Numbered from the stretch's first letter, positions 14,139 to 45,970 are shown. The stretch: 64,000 nucleotides of DNA from Zygnema circumcarinatum SAG 698-1b (GCA_037447605.1 CM074822.1:581492-645491), one strand, 5' to 3'. Numbers and translations are program-made. Notes: generated by a model from the sequence alone, not told the origin.

Positions 14139-16953
14139 CTAAGCTGCCTCCTTTCGCCATTCTTCCTTCGTGACAAGCCCTAATTCAGCGTTCACAGCCT
14201 GGCGAAGTTCCTGCCCAGCATATGATGTCTCATCAATGTCAAGTATTACAGCAACTCTGTGCATGGCGTCATCCCACTGCGTCCTCTGCGGCGGAGAGCT
14301 CTGCTTAAAAGTTGAGGTGAAAGACCTAGAAAATGTATGGGAACCCAAACCAGATAGTATATCCGTAGAAGGTGGTCTGAAGCCTGACTTGAATGCCTCA
14401 CAGACGGACTCACTAGCGGAAGCAGTCAGATTGAAAGTATTCTTCGGCAGTCCGCCTGCTGATGATCCTTCATTTTTCTCGAAATATGGCAGTTTCTGCA
14501 AGTCGCCGGTTCTCTGAGGCAGGTTTCCCAAAGGTAGGGCAGGAAGCTGAGCTGTTCCAACAGATATCTCTCTCTCTCTCCCTCCTACATTCTCTTCCAC
14601 CTCTTCCTCTTCCCGGCACGGAATCTCTTGTGTATGGACCCATCCCCAGCTCACTCTTTTGCTTTTGCTAGACGTTCGTTCAATCACAGTTGTTGGCGCA
14701 CTTGTTTCTCCCTCTTCTGAGTTGGAGGGACTCGGTTTTTCAATGCGTAGAATGGGGCTAGGTTTCGGACTGCAACTTCTGACAGGACTCAAAATTCTTG
14801 TGGTGATTTCACTCCTTTCCAGCAGTGGCAGAGGCAGCTTCGCGAAGCTCTCCATCATGTCTTCCCTAATTTTTAGGGTTTGCTGAGAATTGAGAGATCT
14901 CGTTGTTGAAGTTTTCACATCCTGCTCAATGTTTAGAAGGTCATCCACATTCCTCGTCCTAATTGTAATGGTTTCTCCATTCTCCACATTTGCCGTGCCC
15001 TTTTTTTCAACAATAACGCTCTCCTCCATCCTTTTCTCCTCTCCTTCCTGTACTTCATTTCCTGCAGCTTTTTGAGGCACCCTCGCTTTCACTATTGGTG
15101 GACTACTCGCCCCTGTTGCAGTAAAGTCACTTCGGAACTCAGAAGCCGAAATTGCAAAAGAGGTACGCCTTGTCCTGTGGCTGTAGTGCCCTGATCGGGT
15201 ATAGGCACCCACCTCTCCTCCACCTTGTGTCACTACCTCCTCTCTCCCACCAGCTACCCCAACCTTCGTTTGCGTAACTTCAAAAGTCTGTCCACGTATG
15301 GCAATGTTTCTTCCATTGCCTTCCATTCCTTGAGCAAATTCATTCTGCATTTTCCCTTCCTCCCCATCCTCGACATCATCCATGCTAACGCTAATTTCAA
15401 ACTTGCTTTCCTTTAAAAGAACCTCCCTCCCTCTCTCCTCTTCTTCTTCCAAACTTTCCCTCTCCGATTCAACCCTGACCTTTGCATTAAACTCAGCCAT
15501 TCTCTGCTCCGATCCATTCACCAGAGCAGTAGACATTTCTGCTTCAGACTCTTCTCTTTTCTCTGCAGAGACCTGCACTTCAGCCTCTTTATGAGATGCT
15601 AAATTCTGCTGATTCCCGGATTGCTTCAACATCCAAGTACTGCTGGTTTTTATATACATTCTTGCCCCTGCCCGGCCTACCCCTTCCAATATCCTGCCTT
15701 TAAAGCAGGGCCTTGATTGCCGAGCCCTCTCTTTGACCCACCTGGGAACAACAACTGCATACTTATCAAAGCTCTCATCTACTCTATGCTGATCCATCTC
15801 CTGCTCAATTTCATTCCCACGTTGAATATGAGCATTAGGGCTATGTGGTGTGCAGCTACTCGAGGTCGGAGTAACCCTTGATGAAGTCATTGGAGAACCC
15901 TCCGAAGCTCTCAGAAACCTCTTTGGCATGACTTTAACGAGACGCTGCCAGCTTGCATAGGACTGGGCTATGACCACCATAGCGAGTGCTCTCTCTGCCA
16001 CGTGCTCGTTCAGACCGAACAAATTTTCTGGCTCTCCTGCATACAAACAAACACAGAGAGAAAGGTGAAATTTTTGACTCAGAACACGAACAAAACACTC
16101 GTTCTCAGTCATCTTCAATCACTCAGAGCCTTATTCAACAACTACAAGTACTAATTAGAACAATAATACTATATATACTTCAAAAGAGCCCTAATCTGCT
16201 GCTGCTGCTGCTCTTTAAGCATATACCTCGCTTCACGCATCGGCAGACTCGCAGCCATTCCCGAACCTCCTCAAGCCTGAAAGGCATCTCCCTATGCACA
16301 TCATCCACATCATGCAGCCTCTCTGCCGCCACATCGTCCAATGGGATCGCGAGAATCTGCCACGTCAGCTCCGCCTGCACGGGGTCCACCACAGCAAAGG
16401 CCCCCAACACCTTCACATTGTAGACCTCCCCTCTCTCCCTCCCCGCCGCCCCTATCTCCACCACCTCCATGGCCTGCCCCCGGTAAGGGAGCCCTCCGAA
16501 CTCAGAATTGACCTGCTTGGGATCGGCCCATGTCTGCGGAAGGATGCCAATGTTCCATGGAGCTGGATGTGCCAGGACTCCCTCCTCCTCTCCCTCTCCC
16601 CCCTCCTCTCCCACCCCCCCTCGCTGCTTCACCTTCAACAGAGGCTCCTCCTTTGCAAACATGCGATTCTCCCGAGTGCCACGTGGCGTCTTACAGATCA
16701 GATTGAGCCCTCCCCGAGAGCTGTAGAGAGGGATGACATGCCATGGCGATGTGGGCTCTCGCCCTCCTCCTCCTCCTCCCCCTCCTCCACCTCCCCATCC
16801 TCCACCTCGTCCTCCTCCTCTTTCTCCCCCTCCTCCTCCTCCTCTTTCTCCTCCCCCTCCCCCCCCCCTCCCTCGTCCTCTCCCTCCTCCTCTTTCTCCT
16901 CCCCTTCCTCCCCCCCCTCCTCCTCCTCCTCCTCCTCCTGCTTTCCCATCCAT
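14139..16953 (-). CDS. Family I soluble inorganic pyrophosphatase-like protein (catalytic residues lost) with a long disordered C-terminal extension
   Basis: Exons 16953-16227 and 16036-14139 (phase 1, GT-AG). Colinear with eukaryotic/plastid sPPase: SPWHVIPL, WNIGILPQTWADP, EVVEIG, LAIPLDD, GEPENLFGL, SWQRLV. Confidence 0.85.
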
Positions 16954-17762
16954 TGAAGGGCTTCTCCTCCTCGTTGCCCGCCAAAGACGAGGCTCTATGG
17001 CTCCTTACGGATTTATAATTACGTTTTTGAATGGGAAGTGTTTTTATCTAAAGTGGGTTCTTGTTGAATGGCCGTTGAAGGGAAGATTAAACGGACTGAG
17101 ATTTTGGGGTGTCTTCCACGAATTAGGGAAGGCAAGGGAGAGGGAGGGGGAGAAGGAGTGTGAGGAAGAGACAAGGAGAGGGAGAAGGAGAGGGAGGAGA
17201 GAGAGAGTGGAAGAGGGGGAGGCGACGGAGAGGGAGGAACGGAGGGGAGGGAGAGGGGGAGGATATGAGAGAGAGAGAAAGAAAGAGAGAGAGGGAGGGA
17301 GGGGTGGTGGAGTGGGAGATAGAGAGAGATAGAGAGAGAGGGAGGGAGGGGAAGGGGAAGAGGAGATAGAGATAGATAGAGAGAGAGGGAGGGGAGGGGG
17401 AGGGGGAGGGGGAGAGAAAGAGAGAGAGGAAGGGAAGGCAGGGGGAGAAAGTGATAGAGAGAAATAGAGAGAGAGGGGAAGGGAGAGTGAGAGAGAGATA
17501 AATAAAGAGAGGGAGGGAAGAGAGGGGAAGAGAGGGAGAGATAGTGAGAGAGGGAGTGAGGGAAGTGAGCGGGAGGGAGCGATAGAGAGAAATAGAGAGA
17601 AAGGGAGGAAAAGTGAGAGAGAAATTAAGTTATAGTGGGAAGGGAGGGGGAGGGATAGAGAGATAGGGAGGGAGAGAAGGGAGTGGGAGAGAGCAAGAGA
17701 GTGAAAGACTTAGGGATAGAGAGGGAGGGAGGGAAGGGAGAGGGAGAGAGAGAGAGCGATTT

Positions 17763-17801
<39 letters not shown>

Positions 17802-17849
17802 GGAGGAGGCGGCTGACGCCGTCGGACCCTCGGCAACTGCAGCGCGCCA

Positions 17850-18310
17850 AACAGCGCGTGACGTGACATCATCGTAGTCCACGGAGTTGCCACGTGGCGT
17901 CGCGGCAGCCGAGGACTGCCATGTCGGCAGAAAGCGACAACCGGCCCGGTCGGTGGCGCGCCACGTGGCAGTGGCTGAGACGAGAGTACGAATTTCAATG
18001 ACACGTCCCGACAAAGTCCCGATATTTTGTCGTTTTCTGAACTACCGTACCGTACCGTACAAATCGCACGAGAAAATTTTAAGCAATAAGTACGTGCCAC
18101 GTGGACGCGGACTTGTGGCTGCACCGATGGGCGCCACGTTCGTTTTCTGTCGTCTAGTGCCTTAGCGAGCTAACTTTCCGGTACCAAGGGTACGGACGAT
18201 TTCTGTTTTTCAGATAGACAAAATAATCGTTTCCAAATCGTAATTTTTTTTTTCAACTGGCCAATGGAGGTGCCCCACGTGTGCAATCGTGCCGACGTGG
18301 CCGATCCATG
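17850..18310. promoter_or_regulatory. Divergent promoter region (PPase-like / MiaB) with a G-box cluster
   Basis: Multiple CCACGTGG/CACGTG motifs between two head-to-head start codons. Confidence 0.4.
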
Positions 18311-37592: not shown

Positions 37593-39220
37593 CACTTTCG
37601 AGAAGGTTTTGATGTTATTTCAGAACTCTTATCAGAGTTAAATGCTTCACCATAAATTCAGATTCCATGTAGAAACAAGGCTTCCTTTTTCAGGATGGCG
37701 ACTCCGCGGGCCATCGTTGGATTTCTAAGACTACTAAGGTTCAGTGTAAGCATTCAAAGCCAAAGTACTTATCTAGGGATTCGGTTTCAAGCAAAAAAAA
37801 CTTCAGCAACGTTAGATTTGAAGATCTTTCGAGAATTTAGACTCTGCTTGAGTTCAAACTTCCACTTGGGTTATGGAAAACCAAAACTGAGTTTCCTGAA
37901 AACCACTCTTAAGTAAAAAGGAAAAGGAAGTATTGATCGCACACCTGCAGCAGGATTCTAAATATATTCCTTAACAGTATCAAACTGTATGCTGACTCAA
38001 TCGCCCTCCCCTTGCGGCGCCTTCTTAAGCACTGGAGCTCACCGCCATAGCTATGGACTCTCTGAAGAGGAGAGGACGAACCCAAATATGGTGAATCTAA
38101 CTCTTGAAACTCCGCTAAAAACACCATATTCAAAAGCAAACGAATTACGGTATGCCACGTGTTACACTTTGCTGACATGGTAGACTGTGATTGGCGGAAC
38201 TATTAGGGTATCTTTTTACGAATTCCAATATTCCGACAGCTCAGAGTATTTTGAACCAATTAAGAATTGACACGTGGTCCATTTAAATCTCGTCACGTGT
38301 CATACCCTATTTTTCTATTCGGGCACGAAAGCGAGACCCCGAATTATTTAGCGTCCCCGTAGGCTTAGAAATGGCCATCGACATTTTATCGGGTCCGTTC
38401 GCACCTGCGAGTTGACATCAGCAATGTTGAACCACTTCAGCATTCAAGGCTTTCTCTCTGTCCTTATGTCCGTTGTGACCGCTTCTTTTGGTTCCTTATG
38501 TCGATTTTATCCATGTACATTTGATGGCCTTGCCATCGTGAGTTCAATCAAACATCTTTTTTCTTCAGCATTCGTTCAACTAAATTGACGAAGTTGAACC
38601 ATGAAGACGCACCGTATTTATGTAAAAGTGGAACAGCAATTTCCTCGGGATACTGTACATATCTACAAAAAATTTCTATTCAGTGAAACTGGCATTTTTG
38701 TAGTTTGTCCACTATCCAGTAGAACTGGTGAATTTCCAGTTTACCCTATCTCCAGTACAGTTGGAGTTTTCCCAGTTTAACCTACCGGACTCGAGCATAG
38801 AGCAGGATGCATAGGTGCACAGCCCTGCCAAGATTCCGTACAAACCCAAATCCAGGTGACGGAATTCGATTTCAGAAAACCAGATCGCACAAAATCTGTA
38901 TTTGTACGGACCTCGTGCGGTCCAATAGGAAGCGACCGCGAGGGGACTCCCGAGGACCACTCTGTCACGTAGACCAATTGAAGTTTACACTGTACGGACA
39001 CGTGGCATGTAAACATTGGCGGCTGGATCTCTTGTGAAGGTATCGGAAAAACGAACCAATCAAAGATTTCCACGTCTGCTCCTAGACACGTGTCATACCG
39101 TGACTGGTCAGAGTAAACGGGCGCAGCGCGCGCGCGCGGAATGAAGGCGGCGCGCGCTCTCCCTCCCGCACTCCTCCCTCTCCCTCCCATACCCTCCGTC
39201 TCCCTCTCTCCACATCTCTC

Positions 39221-39253
<33 letters not shown>

Positions 39254-39333
39254 CCTCGCCCTCTCTTTCACATCTCCCCCTCTCTCTCTCTCATCCCTCT
39301 CACCTCTCTCCCCTCCCTCGCACATTCCGAACC

Positions 39334-40468
39334 ATGTCGACTCTCAGAGAGGGCACCTCTCTGCTCATGGCGAAGAACTATGGCTACTCTGCCGTCAATA
39401 CCCACCCCTGGGACGAATGGGAAGCCGGCTTGGCACGTGCGAGCGACTCCAAGTCCCGTGAAAGAGCAATGAAGGCCCGCATGGTGGCCCTAGCCGCGAC
39501 CCTCACATTGGCCTGCATGGCCGCCGGCTTCTTCTTCTGCTTCCTCCCGGCAGGGCCCGGCTCTCATTCCCACCATGGAAGGCGGCGGCTGAAAGGGGCG
39601 ACCGCGGTCACAGTTTCGGTTACAGACTTGGAGGCTCTCCGGGCGGCAAAAGTGATTCCTGATGTTCTGGACGAGTTCACGCCCACCGTTGAGATCTCCG
39701 TCGTGTACAAAGATCGGACGGTTAAGAATGGAGATGAGCTTACGGCTCACGATCTGACGCCTTTCTTTGTGGGTTCAGGGCCGAACTTCACCGTTGGGGG
39801 TTCAAGCTCGTCACTGTACTCTCTGGTATGGGATACTTTACTTAGCTTTAAAAAAAAAGTAATACTTATTATTGATGATTTATTTGATTTGCAATCTTAA
39901 TTTTTTAAAAAGAATAGTTATGAGTGCTTAATTTCAATGAGATCAGGCTGTTAACTACCATACAGGCACTATAAACTCTGCTATTTTACGGTTTTTTTGC
40001 ATGCTATTAGAGCTATCTATCTTTCTTTGTGCCAAGGCATGGAGAAGAATAGAGGAAGGTTTGCGAACAGAGTACAAAAAGAGAGTTTTTAATCAACTTT
40101 CAGCGAATTCTGAAAGAAAACTGAATTGTTTTTTGCAGGTGCTTGTCGACCCCGATGCTCCAAGTCCTGATTCCCCGACGGCTGCACAGTACCTTCACTG
40201 GTATAGGCTCTTCCCGCTACCTACTCTCTCAATTGTATAATTAATATAATAAATTCGCATCAAAGTCCTCTATTTGTGATGATAATGACTGCGAGAATTC
40301 GCCTCTCGAGTGCGCGCTCACTCAAGTACTGCTCATTCATTCGAATGAATTCAGCCTTCGAGCATTTGTTTCTTTGAGATCATCCTTTAGCTTTACGTAT
40401 TTCTTTCTGCGCTTGCAGGATGTGGGTGAATGTTCCCGGTCAGAGCGTTGTCCCAGGCAGTGGTGAGT

Positions 40469-40554
<86 letters not shown>

Positions 40555-41030
40555 CCTCTCTTCGCCTCCTATTTTCCTCTCATCCTCCACCTCGCCCTTC
40601 CTTCCTCCTCCCGCAACCCCCTCTCGTCTCTTTCCCCCCCCCCCACCCTCCCCCTCTCGCCCTCTCCCCCATCTTCTCCCTCACCCCCCTATCTCTCCCC
40701 TCCCCCTCTCTCCTCCTCCCCCAACCCCTCTCTCACCCCCTCTCTCCTACCTCTCCCTCTCCCGCAGGCGACGAGCTTGTGAAGTACACCGCTCCCAACC
40801 CCCCCTCCGGCCTCCACCGCTACGTGTTCGCCCTCTTCCTTCAACCCGCCGCCGTGGCTGCCTCCGCGCCCTCCTCTTTCTCCCTCTTCAGCACGAGGGA
40901 GTTCGCCTCCTCCTTCTCCCTCACCCCCGTCGCCTCCCTCTTCTTCCTCGCCCAGCGAGCCGAGGGGGTCATTGACGAGCTCGGCTCCGAACCCAAGGAC
41001 GAAGATACACTGAATGCGGTCGTGGTTTGA
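39334..41030 (+). CDS. PEBP (FT/TFL1/MFT-family) protein with N-terminal transmembrane anchor, paralogue 1
   Basis: Exons 39334-39825, 40139-40200 (62 nt), 40419-40462 (44 nt), 40768-41030. Motifs: VIPDVLD, VLVDPDAPSP, QYLHW, PNPPSGLHRYVFALF. Hydrophobic segment MVALAATLTLACMAAGFFFCFL. Confidence 0.92.
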
Positions 41031-41049
41031 GACGTGGAATCAGATCAAC

Positions 41050-41187
41050 CTGTGTGTCAACTTGTGGATCAACTTGTGGATCAACTTGTGGATCAGCCTG
41101 TGGATCGACTTGTGAATCAACTTGTGGATCGACTTGTGGATCAACTTGTGGATCGAGTTGTGGATCGAGTTGTGGATCGAGTTGTGG
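41050..41187. repeat. 12-bp tandem repeat TGTGGATC(A/G)A(C/G)T in the PEBP1 3' region
   Basis: About 11 copies. Confidence 0.9.
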
Positions 41188-43061
41188 GTAAATTATGTGT
41201 AGAAGTTAGAGCAATTGTGAGGTAGATCAGAAGTTAAATGCTTGCGTGAGATTCGCAGTGAGGATCCACTTGCTTCAAGTGAGTGCAGAGGTAACAAAGT
41301 TAGTTCATAGAGTGGATCCAAAAGCTAAACTTTTTTGATGGCTATTTAGATTTTTGTACAAATGTTTGTTTAGATCATCCTTTGTGTTTAGCACTCAACT
41401 AATTTTATTTCTCTGTGAGAATATGACGCCCTTTTTTTTTCCGGCAAAATTAAAATGAGGGGACCCTTTTGTGATTTATGGGCTTCATCGGAGGGCTTTT
41501 TCTCTACTAGTGATGGTGGCAATTTTTCATTTAATCATTTTCAATATTCAAAACTTTGAATATTGAATATTCTCAGAGCTTTCAAATACTTTTTCAAAAA
41601 GCTGTTGTGAGTTACTGATCGATCGCCTTTGAAACTTTGAATAGCAAAAATACAGACTCGAATTTCAGGTTTCTTTTTTTTTGTTTCACCCGAGTCATTG
41701 GTCAGCCCATCTGAACTTAAAGCCCTCCTGGATCCGCTTAACTGGCCTAACCCTAAACCCCAAACCCTAAAGCTTATACCCTAAACCCCAAACCCCAAAC
41801 CCCAAACCCTAAAGCCTTTACCCCAAACCATAAAACCTATACCCCAAAACCCTAAACCCCAAACGCCAAACCCTAAAGCCTATACCCCAAACCCTAACCC
41901 CAAAGTATACAGGTTTCTTGAATTTGCAACACCCCCCCCCCCCCNNNNNNNNNNCCCCCCCCCCCCCCCCCCCCCCCCCTGGAATAGCACGTATAGAAGA
42001 AATAAACTGAAAACTGACGCTTTCAGTCACTAGTTACAAGGCCAGTTCCACATGGAACAAGAGTGACACATGGCTGTTAACAGTAACGGAGCCTCAGTTT
42101 GGCAGCATTATGAGGCTTGCAGGCAACTCTTTTCCTTCTTGGTGCAAACTTTTACAGTACATCACATAGTGAGTTTTGATGCTCTACACTGAAAAAAAAC
42201 CCTTAAGGCCCTCCACACCCTAAAAACCCCAACAACCCTCAAGCCCAAAACCACCCTTATATCCCTAAAGCCTCTACCAACCTAACAGCCCTAAAGCCCC
42301 AAACAACCCTAAAGTAGGAAAGAAATCTGCATTGGTCCCACGATGACATGAAATGTACATGTTCAACAACAAAATGGGAAGAACAAAGAGGAAGCAACCG
42401 CTCACAAAGCACCTATGGACATTAGAAAAAAGCCATGAGCTGAAATGAGCCATGAGCTAACTCCTTCACCAAACTCTAACAACCCTAAAAACTAGGCTTA
42501 GTTCACAAACATCTTCATCAACATCACAAACATAGACTGGTGAAGGTTCAAAGCCTTTCTTAAGCATATCTCAAGCAGCATAAGAAAAAATCTTTGAGTC
42601 ATGGAATCAAGGACAAGTTGATTCATAAGTTTTACATCCTTCCTTGAGACAGGAGGGACCGGAGCTTACAATATGTACACTATATCTACAACTAAGCTCG
42701 AGCCTTTCAAAACGTGAGAAAGCACTGCCAGCAAAAAGCTTGATGCTATTCACACACTAAGGACCTAAGGTCTGCTAATTACAACTTTGAGAGGTACAAT
42801 GCCCAGCAGGGGCATTACTTTTCTTGCCATAAAAAAAGAAAAAGGTTGCGAGTTATAAGGCCACCTTTCTACAGTCCCTCTCTTCAGAATCTTAAGGATA
42901 AGAGCCATGAGAGAAGGAAAGGGGAGGGAGGGAGGGAGGGAGGGCTTGGTACAAGCAGGACCTTTTCTTGCCTTCAAAATTGGACCCTCCTGAGAGCTGA
43001 TGAAGAAAAGTTGAGATTAAAGAAATCCTAAACCCTAACCCTAAACACTAAACCCTAACCC

Positions 43062-45265
43062 TCACTCGTCTTCGTCTTGACTAGCTACAATATACACTGC
43101 CGCTGCGGGCTCTCCGAAGCCCATATATAAGGCGAATTTTTTTGTATGGAAGCCAATACGATGACCGGATACAGGCTCGTTGAGGATGGTCGGCTGCTTG
43201 AACAATACCAGAAGCAGTTTTTGCCCTTCTTGAATGAAACTTGGAGGTTTGTAAGAGACCACTTCCCAACCTGTATAGGGGAAGCAATCGACAGAGGCAG
43301 GCTTTTCAAAATGGTCAGAAAATCTTGCTATTTGGAGAGGTATAACAGAACATCATGCTCATTAGAATCTATCAATTGAGTGAGGGGTAATAGATAGACT
43401 CCAAAAATGCCAAAATTGAACTGTTTTGGTTCAATCAAACTTCTCGGTATATATCCAAATAAGAAAAGAAGCAAATGGAGGGGAGATGAGTGCAAAACAA
43501 AAGGAAGGAAAAGAAGAGAAGAGAAGGGAAGGGAAGGGAAGTTAATGACATAGTTTAGATCAGAGCAGAGCAGGAATATCTACGCTTATCACAGTGAAGC
43601 CAAACCCTTTCAGGATATGTTCAGACAGTTTCCAAAAAACAGCAGAAGCAAGTTTCAACTATTGGGCTGCTCCTTGTGTCTCATCAACAAAAGTATTTCT
43701 TCTTTTTGTCATAAAATTTCATCTCTTTAAGCATTTAAGCACCTCAAACTCGGAAGGGCAAAACGAAGCAGGAGAGGGCAAGTTAAGGAGCCTCTTTATT
43801 CAGCAGTAAAAGTTGAATGAAAAAAACTCTATCAGTATGCTCATGCTGGTTTGGATGCAGGCCGTACCGTCACGAGCAGAGCCGCCGCCAGGAATATTCA
43901 TCACATTCCTGTTGCAATAGAACAGTACAGAGGTGGCTCAGACACAAGAAAAGAAAAAAAACTCACAAAACCCTAAAAACTTGAACCAAGCATCTCGGTT
44001 GAAACTTTCTTAGTTTTGTCTTAAGAGTATAGAAGTTAACGATCAGAGACATTCAAGAAAAGAGAGAGTAGCCAAGGAAAGAGATTGAGATTAGGGAAAC
44101 GTTTAATGAAACATACCAGCAAGAAATAAGTTTTCTTTCACTTCCAAAAATTGTATCTCACATAAAAACCCTAAAAACCGAAAGTTCGATCGATGACTTA
44201 CCACATAAGAGTGCTAGGTTTTCGATCCTTGTGAGACTCGGGAACATCCAGGTCAATCATCAGCTGTAAGAACAGGTAAGAAATGCTTTAGATAGACAGA
44301 TTCTAAGTAGAAGGCTGTGAAGACAGCTGGAATTAAGCTATGTCTACATTATTTGTGGTTCTGCAATGTTCTCAACAAAATGCTCACCGTGCAACATTTT
44401 AAAAAAGCATTCACTAGATGCGTCGTCCTGAAGCAAATTATACTCAGTTATGCATTGCAAAGAAAAGAGTGCCTGCCTTCGTAAGCATGTGTGTGTGTGC
44501 GAGAGAGAGAGGGAGAGAGAGAGGGAGAGAGAGAGGAGAGAGAAACAGAGAAAAAAGAGAGAAAGAGGGAGAGAGAGAGAAAGAGCGGGAGAGAGAGAGA
44601 GAAAAACAGAGAAAAAAAGAGAGAGAGGGGAGATAGAGAGAGTGGGAAAGAGAGAGGGGAGAGAGAGTGGGAAAGAGAGAGAGAGGAGAGGGGAGAGAGG
44701 GGAGGGAGAGAGAAAGGGAGAAAGAGAGAGAGAGAGAGAAAGAGAGGAACAGAGAAAAAGAGAGGGAGAGTGAGAGGGAAAAAAGAGCGAGAGAGAGAGA
44801 GAGAGATTTTACCAAGGTGTACAAATCACTGTTGTTTCCTCTAACTCCGACCACTGGCGAAATGGCCAAATCAGAGACAGGCACTCGAGTTCCATCCATT
44901 GCCCTCCCGCCGCTGTAATGCACTTCCATGTCCACCGTCGGCGAAAACTCATCCAAAGCATCCTCAAAAACAGCGCCGTGTTGCATCCAATACGCGGAGG
45001 AGCCCTTCCTCTCCACTTCAAAAAGGTGCCGACGATGATGCAGGAAGCTCTTTGGATGAAAGATAAGAAAGGCGAGTGCCACAACGGCGATAGTCAGCAC
45101 AGTCCCGAGCCCGACCAGCATCACCTGCTTCCTCCTCTTCTCCTGCTTCACCTCTTGGTCCGTTAAGGGCGCCGAAATGGACCATGCGTGGACGGGCACA
45201 GACAGAGATACGCTTCCCTCTGCCGCCGCCATAAGCAAGCCCGTGCTCTCGCGCATGGTCGCCAT
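43062..45265 (-). CDS. PEBP-family protein with N-terminal transmembrane anchor, divergent paralogue 2
   Basis: Exons 45265-44813, 44263-44202 (62 nt), 43908-43868 (41 nt), 43270-43062. Motifs: DALDEFSPTVDMEVHY, LYTL|LMIDLDVP, MW|NVMNIPG, EVVSYKPP, LLVLFKQ. TM segment VMLVGLGTVLTIAVVALAFLIF. The 3' end could instead splice at GA|GTGAGG near 43066. Confidence 0.85.
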
Positions 45266-45569
45266 GGCGGCTACTGCTGCTGAGAGCAGGCTTTGCAGGA
45301 GAGCCCCTCCTTCTTGCGGAGAAAGGGCCTCTACTTCTTCCTCCTTCCTCTTGCTTCGTCCTCTCTGCCTCCGCTTGGTATGGTGTAGCTCTCTCTCTCT
45401 CTCCCTCTCTACCTCTCTCTCTCTCTCTTTCTCTCTCTCTGGCGGCTGAGAGATAGGAGGGAGTCGTCGACAGAGAGGAGAAGCTATGGCTGGCGGGGGA
45501 GAGAGGTAGGGAGGCCACGTCCCGACAAGCGGCGCCGCTCGCGCGCGCGCGCGCAATGGTGGAACCAAT

Positions 45570-45970
45570 GGAAGTGTGTCACGTGGCGGTTGGTGATTGG
45601 ACGAGATAAGAACGAGGTTCTATGAAGTGTCTTAGCGTAGTGTGTGACGCGTTTCAGGGTTCCATGTAGGGGGTGAGATGACATGGTACCCACGTGGCAA
45701 GTGCAATAATTTCAGCCAATAGTAAGAAAACACGTGTAAATTCGAGGTGGTCTGGATGCCACGTCAAGTGGTGTTGCCACGTTGGCTCGAGACCATCGAC
45801 CGCGGTGACCGCCGGTCAAGGTCATTTTTTGCAGAACGTTGGCGATGGCCGAGTCCGTGACCCGCGGTGGGCCACGGCGGACGCTTACGGACGGCCACGT
45901 GGATTGGAAAAAGCGGGTTATGATAGGCCCACATTGGTTCTAACAAATCGTGGCATCTGACGTGGCATGT
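45570..45970. promoter_or_regulatory. Divergent promoter (PEBP2 / DExH helicase) with ACGT/G-box cluster
   Basis: TCACGTGGC, CCACGTGGC, ACACGTGT, GCCACGTGG and GACGTGGC motifs. Confidence 0.4.

What the first reader, a model, noticed from the sequence alone, without database searches (positions are those of the whole stretch)
39334..45265. Convergent pair of membrane-anchored FT/MFT-structured PEBPs
Seen: both genes have the four-exon layout with 62-nt exon 2 and 41/44-nt exon 3. Each adds an N-terminal extension of about 90 aa with a hydrophobic helix of about 22 aa preceded by basic residues (RERAMKAR; KQEKRRKQ). Established: the 62/41-nt exons are diagnostic of plant FT/TFL1/MFT genes, which encode soluble proteins of about 175 aa; by the positive-inside rule the PEBP domain would face the lumen or apoplast. 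Inference: an undescribed type II membrane-tethered branch of the florigen family, duplicated and diverged locally.
Basis: partly seen in the sequence, partly recalled or inferred. Interest (0 to 1): 0.85.

Follow-up and report, generated by a model that had tools for sequence, protein, structure and literature searches.

The report
Membrane-anchored florigen-family (PEBP) gene pair
Two neighbouring genes of a plant-lineage alga encode relatives of the flowering-hormone (FT/MFT) protein that carry an added tail and membrane anchor at the front; the same layout is found in transcripts of other algae, so this normally soluble family has a conserved membrane or secretory branch that I could not find described.

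Summary
Both genes are intact four-exon GT-AG models. g1 lies on the + strand at 39334-41030 (exons 492/62/44/263 nt, 286 aa). g2 lies on the - strand at 45265-43062 (453/62/41/209 nt, 254 aa). The N gap (41945-41954) sits in an intergenic poly-C run and touches neither coding sequence.

Each protein has about 47 residues of tail, a 22-residue hydrophobic helix, a linker and a PEBP domain of the plant type.

The layout is not private to this genome. A profile of the two first exons found four full-length relatives in other transcriptomes (257-287 aa). They share the first 13 residues (M-x-T-x-R-E-x-T-x-L-L-M-A, an acidic dileucine), the helix and an R-x-L-[KLF] motif after it. g1 and g2 each have their own orthologue (51% and 40% identity), so the duplication is old, not recent. 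g1 keeps DPDxP and GxHR. g2 and its orthologue have lost both and the pocket histidine, but keep the fold.

The type II reading, with the PEBP domain facing the lumen, is plausible but not proven. Net charge is equal on both flanks of the helix. Support comes from basic residues next to the helix, the dileucine tail and shorter relatives with plain signal peptides.

I found no published description. I rate it a new variant of a known kind, interest about 0.6.

The parts
39334..39825 (+). g1 exon 1 (492 nt, 164 aa): N-terminal tail, membrane helix, linker and first third of the PEBP domain in one uninterrupted frame
   Evidence: residues 99-161 match TFL1/CEN/Hd3a/FT; the only Met codons are 1, 12, 46, 50, 62 and 186, so no start codon is available for a soluble domain
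39334..39372 (+). g1 conserved N-terminal 13-mer MSTLREGTSLLMA (acidic dileucine E-x-x-x-L-L)
   Evidence: the same motif starts g2, P0002 and the true starts of the L001 and L002 transcripts
39481..39546 (+). g1 hydrophobic helix, residues 50-71 (MVALAATLTLACMAAGFFFCFL)
   Evidence: the aligned helix in relative P0002 is modelled with pLDDT about 90
39580..39594 (+). g1 post-helix basic motif RRRLK (fits Rx[LIT][KL])
   Evidence: the aligned position holds RQLK, RRLL and RHLL in relatives; consensus from PMC9237531
40139..40200 (+). g1 exon 2, 62 nt (VLVDPDAPSPDSPTAAQYLHW)
   Evidence: 62-bp rule in PMC7151754; the same 62-nt exon is present in Spirodela and Closterium genes
40419..40462 (+). 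g1 exon 3, 44 nt (41 plus one codon)
40768..41030 (+). g1 exon 4 with GLHRY and a conserved C-terminal tail (GSEPKD), stop at 41028-41030
   Evidence: (Pfam PBP 19.5 bits on this piece alone)
41945..41954 (.). assembly gap inside an intergenic poly-C run between the two stop codons
43062..43270 (-). g2 exon 4 (209 nt); GxHR replaced by E-G-Q-K
43868..43908 (-). g2 exon 3, 41 nt
44202..44263 (-). g2 exon 2, 62 nt (LMIDLDVPESHKDRKPSTLMW; DPDxP and pocket His lost)
44813..45265 (-). g2 exon 1 (453 nt, 151 aa): tail (MATMRESTGLLMA at 45227-45265), helix (45059-45124), RRHLF (45020-45034), start of the PEBP domain

Best explanation
g1 and g2 are two old paralogues of a small, conserved family of plant-lineage (streptophyte) PEBP genes. 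In this family the MFT/FT-type domain is preceded, in the same first exon, by four elements: a tail of about 47 residues that begins with an acidic dileucine motif, one 22-residue membrane helix with basic residues just before it, and a linker carrying an R-x-L-[KLF] motif. The most likely working is a signal anchor that inserts at the endoplasmic reticulum with the tail in the cytosol and the PEBP domain in the lumen (type II). The tail motif would then steer post-Golgi sorting towards vacuole, endosome or cell surface. The linker motif may let a site-1-protease-like subtilase cut the domain free. g1 keeps the anion-binding pocket and would be the ligand- or protease-binding form. g2 keeps the fold but has lost the pocket, so it would be a partner or decoy. 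Shown here: the gene models, the homology, the conservation of tail, helix and linker in other species, the pocket loss in g2, and RNA-run support for the full g1 coding sequence. Inferred: topology, sorting, cleavage and biochemical role.
For: Gene models and exon sizes. Plant-type domain: PDB phmmer hits to TFL1/CEN/Hd3a/FT. In the tree, green-plant PEBPs form a clade at 100/99 that contains g1 and g2. The model of relative P0002 matches Arabidopsis MFT at TM 0.92. The model of the g2 orthologue P0003 matches TFL1 at TM 0.77. The 62-nt exon is shared with Spirodela and Closterium genes but not with the Coccomyxa gene. Conservation of the extension: the exon-1 profile finds P0001, P0002, P0003 and P0005 (257-287 aa), matched from residue 1 or close to it. 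g1 is 51% identical to P0001 and g2 is 40% identical to P0003. Transcript contigs L001 and L002 carry 5' untranslated sequence and open with MSTMRETTSFLMA and MATMRESTSLLMA. Expression of the whole g1 coding sequence: run X1 holds 0.45 of the sampled words of 39334-41030, against 0.444 expected for four spliced exons with the extension and 0.27 without it. g1 has no Met between residues 62 and 186. Topology: basic residues lie within four positions before every helix, while the first basic residues after it lie three to ten or more positions away. The E-x-x-x-L-L motif can only act on the cytosolic side. Shorter relatives (Mesotaenium, a 1KP sample, Coccomyxa, Colocasia, Symplocarpus, Spirodela, Iris) carry plain N-terminal signal-peptide-like segments. 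The linker motif fits the S1P consensus Rx[LIT][KL] in 4 of 5 sequences.
Against: Net charge over 15 flanking residues is equal on both sides in g1, g2, P0002 and P0003, so the classical rule is silent. There is no disulphide pattern: g1 has only two Cys, both in the helix, and g2 has none. There is only one N-x-S/T sequon per protein. The S1P-type motif is short and common in background proteins (PMC9237531), and g2 has RHLF, which misses the consensus. The signal-like extension of soybean MFT did not change its nuclear and cytoplasmic location (PMC4059689). No trained topology predictor was available.
Confidence: 0.6

Rival explanations
1. The helix anchors the protein with the opposite orientation: the tail is in the lumen or outside and the PEBP domain is in the cytosol. 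This would make it a membrane-parked MFT-like regulator that could be released by cleavage at the basic linker, in the manner of membrane-bound transcription regulators.
For: Net flank charges are balanced, and the C-side flank carries a dense basic/His cluster (HHGRRRLK, HHRRH). All studied plant PEBPs act in cytosol or nucleus. Calmodulin-like proteins AtCML4/5 show that an N-terminal signal anchor can hold a cytosolic domain (PMC4915527, listed).
Against: A 47-residue tail with basic residues right before the helix is a poor candidate for translocation. The conserved E-x-x-x-L-L tail motif would be useless in the lumen. Related proteins have ordinary signal peptides, which place the domain in the lumen.
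Confidence: 0.17
2. The proteins are signal-anchored in the outer membrane of plastids or mitochondria, with an N-terminal helix followed by a positively charged flank and the PEBP domain in the cytosol.
For: A basic cluster follows the helix in five of six sequences. From general knowledge, such a cluster is a hallmark of outer-membrane signal anchors.
Against: The helices are strongly hydrophobic (Kyte-Doolittle 2.1-2.7) and start at residue 46-50, not at the extreme N-terminus. The tail is acidic in places and carries a sorting motif typical of the endomembrane system.
Confidence: 0.08
3. The extensions are not part of the working product. The real products would be soluble PEBPs made from downstream starts, or the extension would be removed as a long signal peptide, leaving an ordinary secreted or soluble MFT-like protein.
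For: g2 has a Met at residue 94, right at the start of the domain, and P0001 has one at 91. The gene caller itself picked later ATGs in L001 and L002.
Against: g1 has no Met between 62 and 186. The first 13 residues and the helix are conserved at protein level in five sequences from at least two organisms, and probably more. Transcript contigs include the full extension plus 5' UTR. The word share in run X1 fits the full g1 coding sequence. A 22-residue uncharged segment starting at residue 48-50 is too long and too far in for a cleaved signal peptide.
Confidence: 0.1

Closest known systems
Plant MFT-like / 'proto-MFT' PEBPs of streptophyte algae and land plants (EuPEBP family; PMC8408984)
   Same: Same fold: the relative's model matches AtMFT at TM 0.92. 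Same four-exon structure with a 62-nt exon 2 and 41-nt exon 3. g1 has the DPDxP and GxHR motifs. Both genes fall in the green-plant PEBP clade.
   Different: Canonical members are about 175 aa, soluble, and cytosolic or nuclear. These carry about 95 extra residues with a conserved tail motif, a membrane helix and a basic linker. g1 has Tyr, not the Trp typical of MFT, at the FT-Tyr85 position, plus a 5-residue insert (LTAHD) shared with P0001 and P0002. g2 has lost the pocket.
Angiosperm MFTs with short N-terminal signal-like extensions (GmMFT, PMC4059689; SrMFT, PMC4937424; also Colocasia, Spirodela and Iris proteins)
   Same: An MFT-type domain preceded by a hydrophobic N-terminal segment. 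The Spirodela gene keeps the 62-nt exon.
   Different: Those extensions are 18-40 residues and start at the N-terminus, like cleavable signal peptides. They have no cytosolic tail, no conserved 13-mer and no RxL linker. The soybean one did not change localisation in protoplasts.
Animal PEBP4 and secreted invertebrate PEBPs (Onchocerca Ov16, Toxocara TES-26, Drosophila A5)
   Same: A PEBP domain behind an N-terminal hydrophobic targeting segment, so a PEBP in the secretory or lysosomal route. The feature search of P0002 put a PEBP4 cluster among its nearest hits (score 0.83, a lead only). Ov16, TES-26 and A5 appear in the fold search.
   Different: They are not orthologues: the tree separates animal and fungal PEBPs from green-plant ones at 100/99. 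The animal proteins lack the long tail, the tail motif and the plant exon structure.
Type II membrane proteins processed by site-1 protease (ATF6, plant bZIP17; consensus Rx[LIT][KL], 'RRIL'; PMC9237531)
   Same: A cytosolic N-terminus, one helix, then a basic R-x-L-[KL] motif 11-17 residues into the presumed lumenal side. P0003 reads RHLL, which I recall as the ATF6 site.
   Different: In those proteins the released, active part is the cytosolic N-terminal transcription factor. Here the folded domain is on the other side of the membrane. No cleavage has been shown and the motif is weakly specific.

Membership tests
Plant EuPEBP (FT/TFL1/MFT) family | PEBP fold / Pfam PF01161 | tested here: met
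   g1 could be scanned only in pieces: exon 4 alone scores 19.5 bits, under the 24-bit cut-off, and exon 1 matches TFL1/CEN/FT in PDB. The g1 orthologue P0001 scores 46.4 bits and P0002 scores 51 bits. The g2 orthologue P0003 has no Pfam hit, but its model matches TFL1 at TM 0.77, E 4e-10.
Plant EuPEBP (FT/TFL1/MFT) family | Four exons with a 62-nt exon 2 and 41-nt exon 3 (PMC7151754) | tested here: met
   g2 is 62/41 and g1 is 62/44 (one extra codon). Spirodela is 62/38 and Closterium has the 62-nt exon. The chlorophyte Coccomyxa gene has other intron positions.
Plant EuPEBP (FT/TFL1/MFT) family | DPDxP and GxHR pocket motifs | tested here: met
   Met for g1 (DPDAP, GLHRY). Not met for g2 (DLDVP, L-M-W, E-G-Q-K) or its orthologue P0003.
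Plant EuPEBP (FT/TFL1/MFT) family | Small soluble protein of about 175 aa without targeting sequence | tested here: not met
   The proteins are 286 and 254 aa, with a 22-residue hydrophobic helix at 50-71 and 48-69.
Plant EuPEBP (FT/TFL1/MFT) family | Groups with green-plant PEBPs in a tree | tested here: met
   In the domain-only ML tree the green-plant clade has 100/99 support and includes g1 and g2. Deeper order is unresolved.
MFT subclade | Trp at the position of FT Tyr85 / TFL1 His88; branching with MFTs | tested here: inconclusive
   g1 has Tyr and g2 has Thr, while Closterium, Mesotaenium, P0005 and SrMFT have Trp. The tree does not resolve MFT against the others with the few references obtainable.
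One TM-PEBP clade (g1-type plus g2-type) | Common origin of the tail-helix-linker module | tested here: met
   The shared 13-mer, helix and RxL motif align in g1, g2, P0001x, P0002 and P0003x. The AU test does not reject one clade (p 0.285). Adding P0005 is borderline rejected (p 0.04).
Type II signal-anchor proteins | Cytosolic N-terminus, lumenal C-terminal domain | not testable with these tools
   Only indirect evidence is available: basic residues adjacent to the helix on the N side, the dileucine tail, and signal-peptide relatives. Net flank charge is equal.
Site-1-protease substrates | Lumenal Rx[LIT][KL] site near the membrane that is actually cleaved | tested here: inconclusive
   The motif is present in g1 (RRLK), P0001x (RQLK), P0002 (RRLL) and P0003x (RHLL). 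g2 has RHLF. Cleavage is untested.
Mitoribosomal protein mL38 (PEBP fold with N-terminal extension) | Best structural and sequence match to mL38 | tested here: not met
   mL38 chains score TM 0.32-0.53 by target, against 0.66-0.77 for TFL1/FT/CEN/Hd3a. g2 shares the tail, the helix and the plant exon structure with g1.

The most novel reading that the evidence does not exclude
A tether-and-release secretory branch of the florigen family. An MFT-like domain is made as a type II membrane protein, sorted by an N-terminal acidic dileucine, and cut free at an S1P-type site into the vacuole or apoplast. There it would act as an extracellular or lumenal ligand or as a serine-protease or carboxypeptidase inhibitor, with a pocket-less paralogue as its partner. 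This would mean that MFT-like proteins had a secretory-pathway role in the algal relatives of land plants, alongside or before the cytosolic and nuclear role known from land plants.
Probability: 0.25. Interest if true: 0.8.

Novelty: new variant of a known kind. Interest (0 to 1): 0.6.

Why it matters
Plant PEBPs (FT, TFL1, MFT) are studied as small soluble regulators that act with 14-3-3 and bZIP partners in cytosol and nucleus. The broad evolutionary survey I read (PMC8408984) compared a trimmed core of about 172 residues and mentions no signal peptide or extension (my term search of it). A conserved family in streptophyte algae in which the same domain is fixed behind a cytosolic sorting tail and a membrane helix, together with a paralogue that has lost the ligand pocket, shows that the family explored a membrane or secretory setting early. 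It also gives a context for the unexplained signal-like extensions on some angiosperm MFTs. The idea is directly testable with fusions and topology assays. It does not change what is known about flowering control.

Tried and rejected
No splice joints or transcript ends could be read.

g2 therefore has no RNA support from this organism.

3. The spliced proteins g1 and g2 have no reference, so I did not type them into any tool. Pfam, PDB, database, Atlas and structure steps used exon pieces or the orthologues P0001, P0002 and P0003 as stand-ins. The whole proteins were handled only in scripts.

4. The search for homologous proteins with g1 exon 1 found nothing. With P0001 and with a 9-sequence profile it returned only 14 and 35 proteins. 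The tree therefore lacks Arabidopsis MFT/FT/TFL1 and bryophyte MFTs and does not resolve the deep order.

5. The feature search of the N-terminal 95 residues gave nothing above 0.57.

6. The species of SRR8128907/8, of ERR2041121 and of the two EukProt transcriptomes could not be identified (one search found no paper).

7. ABRE-like ACGTGGC boxes upstream of both genes looked like a link to ABA-regulated MFT. The box occurs 29 times in the window against 2.2 expected and sits in many promoters, so it is not specific. Rejected.

8. P0006 of Closterium (821 aa) looked like a larger fusion. It is a Cdc6 gene merged with an ordinary soluble PEBP gene.

9. mL38 and prokaryote-type YbhB/'SMFT' PEBPs were rejected on fold ranking and exon structure.


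Full report
**What is in the sequence.** I rebuilt both genes by script from the window. g1 is on the + strand. Its exons are 39334-39825, 40139-40200, 40419-40462 and 40768-41030 (492, 62, 44 and 263 nt). All introns are GT-AG and the frame is open for 286 aa. g2 is on the - strand. Its exons are 45265-44813, 44263-44202, 43908-43868 and 43270-43062 (453, 62, 41 and 209 nt), also all GT-AG, giving 254 aa. The 62-nt exon encodes V/L-x-x-D-P/L-D...L-H/M-W. Exon 1 ends at L-Y-S/T-L; by my recollection these are the intron positions of FT/MFT genes. A survey of pear PEBP genes states that exons 2 and 3 are exactly 62 and 41 bp (PMC7151754). tblastn of both proteins against the window finds no third copy.

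**The gap.** The Ns at 41945-41954 lie between the two stop codons (41030 and 43062), with C-runs on both sides. The gap touches no exon and no frame. The flanks suggest one long C homopolymer that the assembler could not size. Only the statement that the two genes are neighbours depends on this join, and I could not check it with reads.

**The extension.** phmmer of g1 exon 1 against PDB aligns residues 99-161 to residues 8-70 of TFL1, CEN, Hd3a and FT. About 95 residues therefore precede the domain. The hydrophobic segments are g1 50-71 and g2 48-69, with Kyte-Doolittle means of 2.1 and 2.7 over 19 residues. g1 and g2 align over their full length, extension included (E 2e-25, 29% identity; exon 1 alone 35%). 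The invariant positions are M1, T3, R5, E6, T8, L10, L11, M12 and A13, parts of the helix, and H-H-x-R after it.

**Relatives.**
- A profile of the two first exons was searched against 1.84 billion representative proteins. It gave 15 hits at E 0.001 or better.
- Four of these are full-length proteins of 257-287 aa that match from the N-terminus or near it: P0001, P0002, P0003 and P0005.
- P0001 and P0003 come from RNA-type contigs of runs SRR8128908 and SRR8128907. P0002 and P0005 come from EukProt Trinity transcriptomes.
- In contigs L001 and L002 the gene caller took a later ATG. The frames in fact open with MSTMRETTSFLMA and MATMRESTSLLMA, behind 142 and 64 nt of CT-rich leader. P0002 begins MATLRETTSILMA.
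- g1 is 51% identical to P0001 over 261 residues. g2 is 40% identical to P0003 over 257 residues. g1 and g2 are only 29% identical to each other.
- The split into a g1 type and a g2 type therefore predates the separation of these organisms.
- Shorter relatives carry signal-peptide-like N-termini. They are P0009 (Mesotaenium endlicherianum), P0007 (run ERR2041121), P0023 (Coccomyxa viridis), and the Colocasia, Symplocarpus ('MFT'), Spirodela and Iris ('ZCN10') proteins.

**Family placement.**
- Pfam PBP is found in P0001, P0002, P0005, P0007 and P0009, but not in P0003.
- The AlphaFold model of P0002 (pLDDT 80) has a helix at 46-69 and a domain at 91-266. That domain matches Arabidopsis MFT best (TM 0.92), then FT, TFL1 and CEN proteins.
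- The model of P0003 (pLDDT 77) has the PEBP fold. Its best matches are TFL1 (TM 0.77), then FT, Hd3a and CEN, all ahead of animal PEBP1 and mitoribosomal mL38.
- A domain-only maximum-likelihood tree puts all green-plant sequences in one clade (100/99) apart from animal and fungal ones. Within it, g1+P0001x+P0002 has 97/89 support and g2+P0003x has 100/98. The deeper order is a polytomy.
- The AU test does not reject g1 type plus g2 type as one clade (p 0.285). Adding P0005 is borderline rejected (p 0.04).
- Exon mapping gives 300/62/38/212 nt for the Spirodela gene and a 62-nt exon in the soluble Closterium gene. The Coccomyxa gene has introns at other positions. The 62-nt exon therefore ties g1 and g2 to the streptophyte PEBP lineage.

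**Pocket.** g1, P0001x and P0002 keep DPDAP and G-x-H-R-Y. g2 reads DLDVP, L-M-W and E-G-Q-K. P0003x reads DIGPS, L-L-W and V-K-N-A. The g2 type has therefore lost the conserved Asp-Pro-Asp-x-Pro, the pocket His and the GxHR motif in both organisms while keeping the fold. The g1 type shares a 5-residue insert (E-L-T-A-H-D-L) and, in g1 and P0001x, a conserved C-terminal tail (GSEPKD). It has Tyr where MFTs have Trp.

**Is the extension translated?**
- For g1, run X1 (labelled 'RNA?') holds 0.45 of the sampled 31-letter words of 39334-41030.
- The share expected if it holds exactly the four exons, extension included, and no intron is 0.444. Without the extension it would be 0.27.
- g1 has no Met between residues 62 and 186, so no soluble domain can start downstream.
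- The protein-level conservation of the first 13 residues in five sequences, and the two foreign transcripts with leaders, point the same way.
g2 has a Met at residue 94, so a soluble product from a shorter transcript cannot be excluded.

**Topology and mechanism (inference).**
Net charge in 15 residues before and after the helix is +4/+4 (g1), +2/+2 (g2), +4/+4 (P0002), +3/+3 (P0003x), +3/0 (P0001x) and +3/-1 (P0005).
- Three other observations favour a cytosolic tail.
  - Basic residues sit within four positions before every helix, whereas the first basic residues after it lie three to ten or more positions away.
  - The tail opens with E-x-x-x-L-L, a motif read by cytosolic adaptor complexes. 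Acidic dileucines work in plants (PMC9366067, title and abstract).
  - The shorter relatives have ordinary signal peptides.
- After the helix, the aligned motif reads RRLK, RQLK, RRLL and RHLL, with RHLF in g2.
- This fits the site-1-protease consensus Rx[LIT][KL] quoted in PMC9237531. The same paper warns that the motif is too short to be specific.
- I take type II insertion as most likely (about 0.6), sorting by the tail as likely, and cleavage as possible.

**Literature.** The EuPEBP survey (PMC8408984) reports MFT-like 'proto-MFT' proteins in Klebsormidiales, Coleochaetales and Zygnematales, compared over a 172-residue character set. My term searches of it found no mention of signal peptides, extensions or secretion. 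Soybean MFT has an 18-residue signal-like extension that did not alter localisation (PMC4059689). The skunk-cabbage MFT extension is noted without follow-up (PMC4937424). Four full-text searches for a membrane-anchored or transmembrane PEBP in plants or streptophyte algae found nothing relevant. The prokaryote-type 'SMFT/YY-PEBP' is a different protein. Absence from this library is not proof that the layout is undescribed.

**Verdict.** It needs correction on the age of the duplication, the strength of the topology argument, the pocket loss in g2, and the existence of relatives elsewhere. I confirmed that both are conserved in the relatives, but could not test their function.

Noticed in passing
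window, 29 sites, e.g. 39000-39006, 45514-45966, 16359-18301: The G-box/ABRE-like heptamer ACGTGGC occurs 29 times against 2.2 expected from shuffles. It is clustered in presumed promoter regions, including a dense cluster just upstream of g2. It looks like a general promoter element of this genome.
   Followed up: partly
window 41043-41187: A 12-nt tandem repeat (GATCAACTTGTG, 12 copies, 87% matches) starts 13 nt after the g1 stop codon, so probably in its 3' UTR.
   Followed up: no
window 41749-41904, 42231-42308, 43023-43062: Degenerate telomere-like AACCCTA/AACCCCA arrays fill the space between the two genes. One of them runs right up to the g2 stop codon.
   Followed up: no
window 39157-39319, 40470-40761, 44501-44680: Long CT/GA microsatellites and C-rich low-complexity tracts occupy the g1 leader, g1 intron 3 and g2 intron 1. 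The leader of the foreign transcript L001 is CT-rich in the same way.
   Followed up: no
L006 (Closterium sp. Naga37s-1, protein P0006): The deposited 821-aa protein joins a Cdc6/ORC-like ATPase to a PEBP. The PEBP part starts with its own Met and has its own exons, so this looks like two neighbouring genes merged by annotation.
   Followed up: partly
proteins P0004, P0008, P0019, P0024: Several database proteins carry two to four PEBP domains in tandem (393-1783 aa; Eragrostis and unnamed sources).
   Followed up: no
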